Made by a program: the position numbers and the translations under genes. Below the pieces are notes generated by a model. It saw only the letters and a program-made list of their open reading frames with translations, was not told where the DNA came from and made no database searches. From assembly GCA_044892505.1 (NCBI GenBank), contig CM097882.1:111724001-111771902 (forward strand): a DNA stretch of 47,902 nucleotides, read 5' to 3'. The DNA comes from Schmidtea nova (lineage: Eukaryota). The stretch's first letter is position 1, and every line of letters starts with the position of its first letter. Positions 5,760 to 8,289 of the stretch are shown here, one piece after another.

Positions 5760-6870
5760 ACTTTGACTATAGACATTTTGATCTATAGTCATCCATTATG
5801 GAAATTATTGATATTAATATTAAAAAAAGATCAAAGGTGAAACAAAAAGATAATTATGATATTATTCATATTGTTAGGGTTTAATAAAATTTGTCAAATA
5901 AAAAAATAAAGCATAGAAATTTAGTAAAAATCAATATAAATAATAAAATTTTAAAAGTAATAATTAAATCATGGAAATTAATTAAAAATTTTAAAAATTA
6001 AAAAATAAAGATTTTGCGGGGAAATTGGTATGGGTGTATGCCAAATAGTGAGATGAATCCAAAAATGGTAAAATAAAATCCAGGGGATCCCCAAAAAAAT
6101 TTTTAAAAATTAATTGGCTAATGGGGAATCCGAGTAGTGTTTGAAACCCGGAAGAGATAATTAGCCCTGAGAAAATTGATGTCTAAAGGAAACCCAAGGA
6201 GCATAATTAACGAAGGTATAATTGGTGTCTTATTTTAATTAAAGTGATTAGGTAATGGCAAGTAGGAAACACCGCCAGAGGGCTCGCGAGGGAAAACTCA
6301 TTAAAACGAGAGTATATAAATGATACGAAAAGCCCAGAAGTTGCCAGAGTGGTCGAACAAAAAGGATGAGCAAAGAATTATTAAAATAAAAGCCGAAGAA
6401 TTAAAAAAAAATTAAACGATTATTAAAAAAGAAAAGTTAAGCAAATTAAAAAGGGAAAGTTACACGAGTTAGAAGTTGAATTTATTTTTCACAGCGTAAC
6501 AGAAAAGGAGAATATTTTTGGGATATCTATTCATACGCACAATCGAAAAAGAGTTCAAAAAATACTTCTTGTTGTTAGAAATTGTATCAAAGATTTGTGA
6601 TAATAATAATTTCAAATAAAATTTTCTGTGCTGGGTTATTTTCGTGAATCAATCTTAAGAAGACCAAGGAGTCAGATANNNNNNNNNNNNNNNNNNNNNN
6701 NNNNNNNNNNNNNNNNNNNNNNNNNNNNNNNNNNNNNNNNNNNNNNNNNNNNNNNNNNNNNNNNNNNNNNNNNNNNNNNNNNNNNNNNNNNNNNNNNNNN
6801 NNNNNNNNNNNNNNNNNNNNNNNNNNNNNNNNNNNNNNNNNNNNNNNAACTCAGTAAATTCAACATAAAC

Positions 6871-8289
6871 GTCATTAGTTGGCGCGTTTGCAAATAACTC
6901 AAGATTTTATTCAGAGATTCTGAGCAGCTCTGTCGGCTCTGAATTTAAAATTAAATTTTTTTCATTTTGGTGTCACCCCTGTGATGTGGTCACCCGGTGC
7001 GGCCCGCTCCCCTGCATACCTTAGCTGCGCCTCTTCTTTGCAGAGGTTTCTTACATCCTATTATTCGATATTTTCCCTGTGATTGTACATTATTGAAGAC
7101 AAAAATCTTTAATATTATAATATATGCTTTCCAGAGGTTTCTTACATCCCATTATTCGATATTTCCCTGTTTTTAAAATATTATTGTATAATTATCATTT
7201 TTATCTATTATTTGTTTTTTTGTTGGAAATCTCATGTTGCGTATAATTTTCATAGGAATTTGCCCTTTATAATTAATGTTTACCAAAATTAATGTAATTA
7301 AGGCTTAAATAATTTATTGATTAAATAATTTAAAAATTTTTATTACAACCAATATTATTCCTAAAACAAATATTTTTGTGATTTTTGTGATTTGTTTCTT
7401 TTCCATATACAACTTTGAAAGAAGGACCACCTATAAAGGAACCAATTTCATCAAGAAAAAGCTGATTATTGACAGGAGCAAATAATGTATTTATAGCTTC
7501 TTTATCTTCTTCTTCGAATACTTCTATCCAATAATTGTAACATGTCTTCACAAGTTGAACAGGTTTCACCAATTTATAATTTAAATGTTTCTGTAATAAA
7601 TACATTTAATAATCATTGAAAAAATAAACCGGTTTGAAAATTGAATACTCATTGATTTCATTTCTTGAAATTGAAATAATAATAAATTTTAGTTTATATA
7701 CACACGCTTAGTTATATACACACATCTCTCTTTTTATTAGTTCATTATTATTATTATAATTATTAGAAATATCAATAATTTCCATAATGATAAGATTAGA
7801 TCAAAATTTCTTTAAATAAGTACACAATATTTCAGGACACACTTGATACACACTTGATAAAGGCTGTACCGGAATATTGTGTACTTATTTAAAGAAATGT
7901 TGATCTATAGTCTTACCATAATGGGAATTATTGATATTTATACTAAAAAATATCAAAGGTGAAACAAAAAGATAATTATGATATTATAAATAATCAAAAA
8001 AACGTGGCAATGATTTAATAATAGAAAAACACCGACTCAGTAAATTCAACATAAACGCGATATATTTCGATTGTATAACAATCTTCGTCAGGCAGCAATC
8101 AGGATAATCAATAATAAAATAGAAAATATGCTAAATTTAAACAAATTAATCAATAATAATCATCTCCATACTATATCAAAATTTTAATTTAAAAATTTAA
8201 AAATTTTATTTATTTTATTTTATTATATTACATAAAAATGTTTTAAAATTTAATTAAAAAACAAACATTTTACATAGAACAACATACGT
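6871..8289 (-). repeat. Left arm of a ~1.4-1.55 kb inverted duplication (partner 13617-15171)
   Basis: Continuous reverse-complement match with scattered SNPs; lacks ~150 bp present at ~14515-14665. Confidence 0.95.
8056..8094 (-). ncRNA. Minimal hammerhead ribozyme in a PLE 3' UTR (CUGACGA core)
   Basis: TGC CTGACGA A GATTGT-TAT-ACAATC GAAA TATAT C GCG; AUC triplet, predicted cut between 8059 and 8058; lies ~340 nt downstream of the GIY-YIG stop. Confidence 0.8.

What the first reader, a model, noticed from the sequence alone, without database searches (positions are those of the whole stretch)
6849..8289. Inverted transduction of 1.2 kb of flanking DNA whose breakpoint sits on a hammerhead self-cleavage site
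Seen: on the minus strand the order is PLE endonuclease, 3' UTR, HHR (predicted cut 8059/8058), then ~1.19 kb copied from 13844-15171 (non-PLE DNA, including a hAT end). At 6871 the sequence restarts with the HHR 3' cleavage product (6849-6871 = 8035-8057). The junction lies in a CGCGT microhomology shared by the donor (aatgaCGCGTggc) and the cleavage site (tatatC/GCGTtta); one CG is lost. Established: hammerhead cleavage leaves 5'-OH ends that can be ligated into circles (retrozymes), and PLE RTs template-switch. Inference: a read-through RNA with a ribozyme-defined 5' end was circularised or template-switched, reverse-transcribed past the junction and re-inserted ~5 kb away, inverted. This would be a ribozyme-guided route for duplicating arbitrary genomic DNA.
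Basis: partly seen in the sequence, partly recalled or inferred. Interest (0 to 1): 0.8.

Follow-up and report, generated by a model that had tools for sequence, protein, structure and literature searches.

The report
Penelope retroelement nest with hammerhead-edge junction
Two inverted copies of a Penelope-like retroelement tail plus about 1.1 kb of foreign DNA both contain a real hammerhead ribozyme, and only one junction, next to an assembly gap, lies at the predicted ribozyme cut, so ribozyme-guided DNA copying is possible but unproven.

Summary
The sequence facts are mostly right, but the anatomy differs from the finding. The inverted repeat is 6870-8289 (minus) against 13618-15171 (plus), 98.4-98.5% identical. 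Both arms carry about 230 nt of PLE 3' UTR (pLTR), the hammerhead, a roughly 56-nt PLE tail, a nested twin of a second PLE family and about 0.9-1.0 kb of non-PLE DNA. The cut site (8059/8058; 13843/13844) therefore lies inside the duplicated block, not at its edge.

The hammerhead is real. Rfam misses it, but four relatives (51-63% endonuclease identity) carry the same minimal design, with compensatory changes in 7 of 9 pairs.

One junction does sit at the cut. At 6871/6872 the non-PLE DNA joins, through a CG microhomology, a third PLE-1 tail fragment that starts 1-3 nt after the predicted cut. That fragment runs into an N gap after 24 nt and matches each arm's tail at 23/24.

Head-to-head twins, partial tandems, microhomology junctions and capture of 0.9-1.5 kb of host DNA are published PLE behaviour. 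Hammerhead-processed or circular templates were proposed in 2014. In this window none of about 8 short copies of the second PLE family starts at its cut site. The verdict is an ordinary PLE composite with one suggestive, unverifiable footprint.

The parts
6679..6847 (.). N run (gap or mask). It hides the rest of the third tail fragment and whatever follows it. It was not filled.
   Evidence: Six of the 12 N runs in the window begin 5-80 nt 3' of a PLE hammerhead cut.
6848..6871 (-). Fragment B: a third PLE-1 tail piece that starts 1-3 nt after the predicted hammerhead cut. It is joined to the non-PLE DNA through a CG microhomology.
   Evidence: 23/23 to 8035-8057 and 23/24 to 13845-13868. Sequence.
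6872..7756 (-). Left-arm copy of the non-PLE DNA (X). It holds a hAT-like subterminal region (about 6914-7170), two 38-nt direct repeats and an exon-like ORF remnant.
7757..8002 (.). Head-to-head twin of PLE-2-type tails nested in the left arm, with degenerate hammerheads. The same twin lies in the right arm at 13900-14145.
8003..8058 (-). PLE-1 tail of copy A, from the first base after the cut (8058) to the T run. This stretch is conserved in relatives L003 and L004.
8059..8094 (-). Minimal type-I hammerhead of copy A. It has the core CUGACGA, an unpaired A, a 6-bp helix II, GAAA, the palindromic loop UAUA and C17 at 8059. Helix I is 3 bp.
   Evidence: No Rfam hit.
8095..8429 (-). 3' UTR (pLTR) of copy A. 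Similarity to the right arm ends abruptly at 8289.
8430..8723 (-). GIY-YIG endonuclease ORF of the 5'-truncated PLE-1 copy A. PLE homology starts at the first residue, and no RT is present.
   Evidence: tblastn to the PLE-2 EN gives 34% identity, E 2e-10. HMMER relatives reach 63% identity, one of them with RVT_1 plus GIY-YIG. The Pfam GIY-YIG match is weak, E 0.011.
8860..13617 (-). Decayed gag-pol of an LTR retrotransposon (RT, RNase H, integrase) without either LTR. It fills the space between the arms.
   Evidence: No flanking direct repeats.
13618..13843 (+). Right arm: 5'-truncated PLE-1 pLTR plus the hammerhead (core from 13811, cut at 13843/13844).
13844..15171 (+). Right arm: PLE-1 tail, PLE-2 twin and X, including 149 nt (14516-14664) that are absent from the left arm. 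Similarity ends at 15171.
15172..15742 (+). Right flank, unrelated to anything left of the gap. It contains a roughly 480-bp element with 33-nt inverted ends (15229-15261 and 15676-15708).

Best explanation
This is a composite built by Penelope-like elements (PLEs), of the kind these elements are known to make.

Shown:
- A block consisting of [last 230 nt of PLE-1 pLTR, minimal hammerhead, about 56-nt tail, nested PLE-2 twin, about 0.9-1.0 kb of non-PLE DNA] is present twice. The two copies lie head to head with their 3' ends pointing outward.
- Between them lie the endonuclease remnant of the left copy and an LTR-less gag-pol fragment.
- Just outside the left block sits a third PLE-1 tail fragment, B. 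It begins 1-3 nt after the predicted ribozyme cut and is joined by a 2-nt microhomology.
- The hammerhead is conserved in relatives.

Inferred:
- B and its junction were made by PLE reverse transcription. cDNA synthesis started in a PLE-1 tail and ran only to the 5' end of its template. That end was possibly produced by hammerhead self-cleavage.
- The cDNA end was then joined by microhomology to the foreign sequence, either by a template jump onto a read-through transcript or by ordinary 5'-junction repair.
- The unit [PLE 3' part, captured DNA, tail] was copied as a head-to-head twin. The extra tail at one end only would be the 'extension' known from PLE insertions.
For: - Anatomy and identity of the arms.
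- PLE identity of the ORF.
- Hammerhead: the descriptor hits only PLE-linked sites, with 0.007 hits expected. Relatives L001, L003, L004 and L005 have the same design 110-145 nt after the EN stop. Of the pair cells, 93% are paired, 7 of 9 pairs change on both sides, and slid controls reach at most 44%.
- The tail is conserved for about 56-60 nt after the cut in relatives, so B is a genuine PLE tail start.
- The same head-to-head twin architecture occurs repeatedly in this window for PLE-2 (15974-16801 against 16954-17781, 28262-28410, 1-108).
- Published precedents: inverted 5'-truncated copies, one-sided tails and assembly problems (PMC8557442); 0.9-1.5 kb host-DNA spacers before a terminal pLTR, foreign DNA between solo pLTRs and microhomology 5' junctions (PMC3846280); EN cutting both strands and internal RT initiation near the tail (PMC11167929); the hammerhead-processed or circular template hypothesis (PMC4209133).
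Against: - There is only one junction, and it lies 24 nt from an N run.
- PLE-2 short copies start 16-36 nt 5' of their cut, never at it.
- In the one PLE studied biochemically, hammerhead cleavage was dispensable and no RNA ends mapped to the cut (PMC11167929).
- Minimal PLE hammerheads cleave poorly as monomers (PMC4209133). Helix I here is only 3 bp, and the fold is not more stable than shuffles.
- Divergence along the arms is uneven: 0 differences in 637 nt, then 8 in 506 nt, plus two tight clusters. No single-event model predicts this.
- No target-site duplication can be checked.
Confidence: 0.45

Rival explanations
1. An RNA from the right-hand copy, with its 5' end made by the hammerhead at 13844, ran through the flank to 15171. 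It was circularised or used for a template switch, was reverse-transcribed and was inserted inverted at the cut-site position of the left PLE copy. Fragment B would then be the original tail of that left copy.
For: The distal junction lies at +1 to +3 from the cut, with CG microhomology. The right arm continues into unrelated flank, as a native locus would. The hammerhead is genuine. The idea agrees with the 2014 hypothesis.
Against: There is no detectable proximal breakpoint: 148 nt 5' of the cut are identical in both arms and homology runs to 8289. The supposedly copied tail differs from its donor at 4 of 16 positions (8039-8024), while the next 637 nt are identical. There is no ribozyme at the 3' end of the 1.19 kb, so no ligatable ends for a circle. 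There is no poly(A) and no checkable target duplication.
Confidence: 0.15
2. A DNA-level event with no role for the ribozyme. A break in the tail of the left PLE copy, possibly made by the PLE endonuclease, which cuts resident copies, was repaired by copying from the inverted paralogous copy 5 kb away. Synthesis ran on into that copy's flank, and the end was sealed by microhomology-mediated joining.
For: Long perfect identity spans the ribozyme (8206-8040) and reaches into the foreign DNA (8023-7387), as expected for homology-primed copying. The junction has a 2-nt microhomology. A 149-nt deletion with an 11-nt templated filler in the left arm shows end-joining activity at this locus. PLE EN cleaves both strands and also its own sequence.
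Against: The break would have to fall within 3 nt of the ribozyme cut by chance, or through an unknown EN preference. The tail differs between the arms. Twins elsewhere in the window are clearly RT products.
Confidence: 0.22
3. B is an unrelated, later, extremely 5'-truncated PLE-1 insertion into a longer inverted repeat. On this view the repeat only seems to end at B, because the rest is hidden in the N run or was deleted at insertion.
For: Tail-only PLE copies are common in this window. B is a third sequence variant. N runs regularly follow PLE tails. PLE 5' junctions by microhomology are documented.
Against: Nothing left of the gap (5900-6678) matches 15172-15742.
Confidence: 0.1
4. The junction is an assembly artefact. 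The first 24 bases of a contig that starts in a repeated PLE tail were mis-joined.
For: The junction is 24 nt from an N run. PLE tandem and inverted structures are known to break assemblies (PMC8557442).
Against: Both arms and the 5.3-kb spacer lie in one uninterrupted stretch (6848-15742). The arms differ by an indel and substitutions, so they are not a collapsed duplicate. B has its own variant combination.
Confidence: 0.08

Closest known systems
Penelope-like element insertions with pseudo-LTRs and an adjacent inverted 5'-truncated copy (Evgen'ev & Arkhipova 2005; Craig et al. 2021, PMC8557442)
   Same: Head-to-head inverted copies with 3' ends outward, strong 5' truncation, a hammerhead in the pLTR near the 3' end, an extra tail at one end only, and AT-rich or (TA)n surroundings.
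   Different: The arms include about 1 kb of non-PLE DNA. The space between the arms is mostly an LTR-less gag-pol fragment rather than a PLE ORF.
Host-DNA capture by Penelope in Adineta vaga (Pen1_Av 0.9-1.5 kb spacer before the 3' pLTR; foreign DNA between solo pLTRs; Arkhipova et al. 2013, PMC3846280)
   Same: A roughly 1.1-kb unrelated spacer lies between the body or pLTR of the element and a further terminal pLTR piece, with microhomology at junctions.
   Different: Here the terminal piece begins at the predicted ribozyme cut. A full pLTR also precedes the spacer, and no target duplications can be checked.
Minimal type-I hammerheads of metazoan PLEs (Cervera & de la Pena 2014, PMC4209133)
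   Same: The conserved core, an unpaired base between A9 and G10.1, the G10.1-C11.1 pair, a long helix II, a short helix I and a palindromic loop 3. The second family in the window carries the published U3-A8 core covariation.
   Different: Nothing essential differs. Cleavage was not tested, and Rfam models do not score it.
LINE-1 3' transduction and twin priming
   Same: Read-through into the flank, which is then co-mobilised, and inverted 5'-truncated structures formed by priming on both strands.
   Different: There is no poly(A) and no checkable target duplication. The enzyme family is different (GIY-YIG plus a telomerase-like RT).
Retrozymes / hammerhead circRNAs
   Same: A hammerhead-bearing non-autonomous RNA related to PLE pLTRs, and the idea of a ribozyme-defined end.
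   Different: The unit has only one ribozyme, no tandem array, and no second cut site to release a circle.

Membership tests
Penelope-like element (EN+) | C-terminal GIY-YIG endonuclease related to PLE endonucleases | tested here: met
   tblastn to the PLE-2 EN (which has a Pfam GIY-YIG hit) gives E 2e-10. There are 768 HMMER relatives, the best at 57-63% identity. The Pfam GIY-YIG match on the ORF itself is only E 0.011.
Penelope-like element (EN+) | Reverse transcriptase N-terminal to EN in the same ORF | tested here: not met
   Copy A is 5'-truncated at the first EN residue (8723). The upstream RT is of LTR-retrotransposon type. The relative P0005 does have RVT_1 plus GIY-YIG, so the family fits but this copy is a fragment.
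Penelope-like element (EN+) | pLTR with hammerhead near the 3' end, and tandem or inverted 5'-truncated partner copies | tested here: met
Hammerhead ribozyme, minimal type I (PLE type) | Core C3 U4 G5 A6 N7 G8 A9 ... G12 A13 A14 A15.1 ... U16.1 H17 | tested here: met
   CUGACGA / GAAA / U-C are present in both arms and are invariant in alignment A2.
Hammerhead ribozyme, minimal type I (PLE type) | Helices I and II kept by compensatory changes | tested here: met
   7 of 9 pairs change on both sides, 93% of cells are paired, and 0 of 500 shuffles reach this. Only 5 distinct sequences were compared.
Hammerhead ribozyme, minimal type I (PLE type) | Score above threshold with curated Rfam hammerhead models | tested here: not met
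   No hit at gathering score or at E<=10. This is expected for 1-bp helix III variants.
Hammerhead ribozyme, minimal type I (PLE type) | Self-cleavage after C17 | not testable with these tools
   Needs in vitro transcription or mapping of 5'-OH ends.
Retrozyme / ribozyme-released circular RNA | Unit flanked by two hammerheads (tandem or LTR copies), so that both ends are ribozyme-made | tested here: not met
   There is no core motif at the 3' end of the 1.19 kb, and only one hammerhead per strand in 6-16 kb.
3' transduction by a retroelement | Flank co-copied with the element's 3' end into a second locus | tested here: met
3' transduction by a retroelement | Insertion hallmarks at the new locus (target duplication, defined 3' end signal) | tested here: inconclusive
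   An N run hides one flank. There is no poly(A). An AATAAA lies 36 nt before the end, but such hexamers are common in AT-rich DNA.

The most novel reading that the evidence does not exclude
The hammerhead of an EN+ Penelope-like element cleaves in vivo. The 5'-OH end it makes is where the PLE reverse transcriptase runs off and jumps to another template. PLE tails would then become fused, at the cut site, to arbitrary transcribed DNA, which is mobilised and duplicated. The junction at 6871/6872 would be the first genomic footprint of this.
Probability: 0.2. Interest if true: 0.65.

Novelty: new member of a known kind. Interest (0 to 1): 0.35.

Why it matters
What the hammerheads of Penelope-like elements are for has been open since 2014. 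The only biochemical study found cleavage dispensable and saw no RNA ends at the cut. Genomic copies that start exactly at the cut and are fused to foreign DNA would be cheap, countable evidence for cleavage in vivo and for a template-jump route of DNA capture. This one case suggests the census is worth doing in a genome rich in this family. On its own it proves nothing.

Tried and rejected
- Rfam at gathering score and at E<=10 over 6-16 kb found no hammerhead. I replaced it with a descriptor built from published PLE hammerhead features, and that descriptor was tuned after I had seen the motif.
- Single-strand folding of the ribozyme region is no more stable than shuffles.
- The word-index protein search with the EN ORF found no candidate.
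- The exact look-up of a 610-aa window ORF is not on record, so the source genome is apparently absent from the collections.
- Two metagenome scans, one for the PLE-1 tail and one for the family hammerhead pattern, gave 0 hits. No genome-wide junction census was therefore possible.
- P0001 lies on a 1.9-Mb contig whose DNA could not be fetched.
- I looked for homology between the sequence left of the gap (5900-6678) and either 8034-downward or 15172-15742 and found none.
- I looked for a PLE ORF continuing from B. The frame hits a stop at 6672-6674.
- I looked for LTRs around the gag-pol fragment and found none.
- I considered that the 1.19 kb is a regular part of PLE-1 and rejected it. Tail homology with relatives ends about 56-60 nt after the cut. 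What follows is a PLE-2 twin, hAT-like DNA and an exon-like remnant.
- The N run was neither filled nor looked up.

Full report
**What is in the sequence**

A self-comparison of the window shows one inverted repeat in two pieces. The first is 6870-7375 against 15171-14665 (98.4%). The second is 7387-8289 against 14515-13617 (98.5%). The right arm carries 149 nt (14516-14664) that the left arm replaces with an 11-nt filler.

Read on the minus strand, the left arm follows a 97-codon ORF (8723 to 8430). That ORF aligns from its first residue with the GIY-YIG endonuclease of a second Penelope-like element in the window (34% identity, E 2e-10). It has 768 HMMER relatives, the best at 57-63% identity. 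One of them (P0005) holds RVT_1 and GIY-YIG in one ORF. Copy A is therefore a PLE cut down to its endonuclease. Upstream of it lies not a PLE RT but a decayed gag-pol of an LTR retrotransposon (8860-13617) without LTRs.

**The duplicated block contains the ribozyme**

The alignment of the arms starts abruptly at 8289/13618. It runs through 230 nt of 3' UTR, the CUGACGA...GAAA...UC motif and the sequence after it. It continues through a nested twin of PLE-2 tails (7757-8002; 13900-14145) and about 0.9-1.0 kb of hAT-like and unique DNA, and ends at 6870/15171.

The predicted cut (8059/8058; 13843/13844) therefore lies inside both arms. The finding's statement that 1.19 kb was 'copied from 13844-15171' describes only part of the shared block. 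No proximal breakpoint at the cut site can be seen, because the 148 nt 5' of the cut are identical in the two arms.

**Is the hammerhead real?**

Rfam gives nothing, even at E<=10, and the region does not fold better than shuffles. The motif nevertheless has every feature that Cervera and de la Pena list for minimal PLE hammerheads:
- the core;
- one unpaired base after A9;
- the G10.1-C11.1 pair;
- a long helix II (6 bp);
- a short helix I (3 bp);
- a palindromic loop 3 (AUAUAU).

A descriptor with these features hits the window only at the two PLE-1 sites and at seven PLE-2 tails. First-order Markov simulations of the window give 0.007 hits. The descriptor was written after I had seen the motif.

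Independent support comes from relatives. Contigs L001, L003, L004 and L005 encode endonucleases 51-62% identical to copy A (contigs; sequences). All four have the same ribozyme design 110-145 nt after the stop codon. On alignment A2, 93% of pair cells are standard pairs and 7 of 9 pairs change on both sides. No shuffle reaches this, and slid registers give at most 44%. I take the hammerhead as genuine. Cleavage itself is untested.

**The one junction at the cut site**

At 6871/6872 the shared block ends, and the minus strand continues CGTTTATGTTGAATTTACTGAGTT into the N run. This is the start of the PLE-1 tail. It is 23/23 to 8057-8035 and 23/24 to the right arm.

At the two visible variable sites it carries T and T, where the left arm has T and C and the right arm has G and T. 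It is thus a third variant, which I call B.

The junction shares CG between the two partners, so B begins at position 1.2 to 1.4 of the 3' cleavage product. The larger CGCGT shared by both partners is real, but it is not what was used.

Relatives keep about 56-60 nt of tail after the cut, so B is the beginning of a normal PLE tail. Six of the twelve N runs in the window begin 5-80 nt after a hammerhead cut in a PLE tail, so a gap after B is the rule here. I did not fill or look up the N run.

**How unusual is that?**

PLE-2 offers a control inside the window. Its short copies begin at reference positions 17708-17713 (six copies), 17722 and 17728. These positions are 16-36 nt 5' of its cut at 17743/17744, and none is at the cut.

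Short PLE copies thus tend to end near the ribozyme anyway. This weakens the coincidence argument for B: one hit within 3 nt among roughly ten nearby junctions is not rare.

The divergence pattern also resists a simple story:
- 0 differences in 8023-7387 (637 nt);
- 8 differences in 7375-6870 (506 nt). By my arithmetic the chance that all eight fall there is about 0.0015;
- two tight clusters, one in AT-rich pLTR (8245-8207) and one of four substitutions at 8039-8024, directly after the cut. Three of these four touch CpG dinucleotides.

**What is already known**

The following are published for PLEs:
- inverted 5'-truncated partner copies, partial tandems, a 30-40-bp tail at one end only, (TA)n targets and assembly trouble (PMC8557442);
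- a 0.9-1.5 kb spacer of captured host DNA before the terminal pLTR of Pen1_Av, foreign DNA between solo pLTRs and microhomology 5' junctions (PMC3846280);
- cutting of both strands and internal initiation of reverse transcription downstream of the ribozyme (PMC11167929).

That last study also reports that cleavage was dispensable in vitro and that no RNA-seq ends mapped to the cut.

The proposal that hammerhead-cut, possibly circular, RNAs serve as templates for more-than-unit copies dates from 2014 (PMC4209133).

**Most likely mechanism**

I favour an RT-made composite (0.45). cDNA synthesis started in a PLE-1 tail and reached the template's 5' end at or beside the cut. It was then joined by CG microhomology to the foreign sequence. 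The unit [PLE 3' part, captured DNA, tail] exists as a head-to-head twin like the PLE-2 twins nearby, with B as the one-sided extension. Within this, I put ribozyme cleavage as the cause of the end at about 0.2 overall.

The rivals are:
- DNA break repair copied from the inverted paralogue and finished by end joining (0.22);
- a later independent tail insertion, with the rest of the homology hidden or lost (0.10);
- an assembly artefact (0.08).

Circularisation has no support, because the 3' end of the foreign DNA has no ribozyme.

**Limits**

The source genome is not in the searchable collections. The decisive census of PLE-1 junctions could therefore not be run.

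Noticed in passing
window 62-86, 5731-5755, 17719-17743, 28348-28372 (+); 47-23, 16036-16012, 28324-28300 (-): The second PLE family (PLE-2) carries a minimal hammerhead whose core reads UUGAUAA. This is the U3-A8 covariation of the C3-G8 pair, published for Cercyon elements of Schistosoma. 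Seven intact copies are present.
   Followed up: partly
window 1-108, 3441-3651, 5678-5880, 7757-8002, 13900-14145, 28262-28410; 15974-16801 / 16954-17781: PLE-2 occurs almost only as head-to-head inverted twins, some of them perfect palindromes. The inner junctions cluster 16-36 nt 5' of the hammerhead cut. They look like a hammerhead-plus-tail module that spreads on its own.
   Followed up: partly
window N runs starting or ending at 126, 3180, 6847, 15973, 28261, 28451: Six of the twelve N runs begin 5-80 nt downstream of a hammerhead cut in a PLE tail. The unresolved sequence systematically follows PLE 3' ends, where (TA)n is seen when the sequence is resolved.
   Followed up: no
window 4498-4080 (-) and 3062-2586 (-) with 3136-3175 (+): Two further PLE-1-family fragments are present. 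One is an EN remnant whose hammerhead lost its core by an internal deletion. The other is an RT N-terminus (64% identical to P0005) preceded by an inverted, degenerate hammerhead that runs into a gap 5 nt after its cut.
   Followed up: partly
window 24590-27544 (+): A third PLE family is arranged as a partial direct tandem, with repeat pairs 24702-25031/26489-26818, 25204-25514/26837-27146 and 25853-26240/27142-27544. My descriptor found no hammerhead in it.
   Followed up: no
window 29462-31837 and 36440-38815, with 32267-34099: A 2.4-kb inverted repeat (99.3%) carries DNA_pol_B_2 ORFs around a 610-aa ORF with a weak Endonuclease_7 match. There are 47-nt tandem repeats at the outer ends. It looks like a Maverick/Polinton-type element or a pair of them.
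   Followed up: no
window 8860-13617 (-): An LTR-retrotransposon gag-pol lacks both LTRs and is cut inside the integrase. It begins exactly where the right arm ends. This would fit a cDNA of a read-through transcript, but I found no recognisable primer-binding site.
   Followed up: partly
window 8039, 8034, 8031, 8024 vs 13863, 13868, 13871, 13878: Four substitutions between the arms are packed into 16 nt just after the hammerhead cut, inside more than 800 nt that are otherwise identical. Three of them involve CpG dinucleotides.
   Followed up: partly
L001 1420-1454: The contig of the closest relative with a 3' flank ends 2 nt after its predicted hammerhead cut. This may be chance or an assembly break at a repeat boundary.
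   Followed up: no
window 17996-20594 (+) and 20780-20888: A hAT transposase lies in three ORF pieces (Dimer_Tnp_hAT). The GC-rich stretch downstream of it resembles, in inverted orientation, the hAT-like part of the duplicated DNA (6968-7134).
   Followed up: partly
window 15229-15708: A roughly 480-bp element with 33-nt inverted ends (88%) lies in the right flank of the repeat.
   Followed up: no
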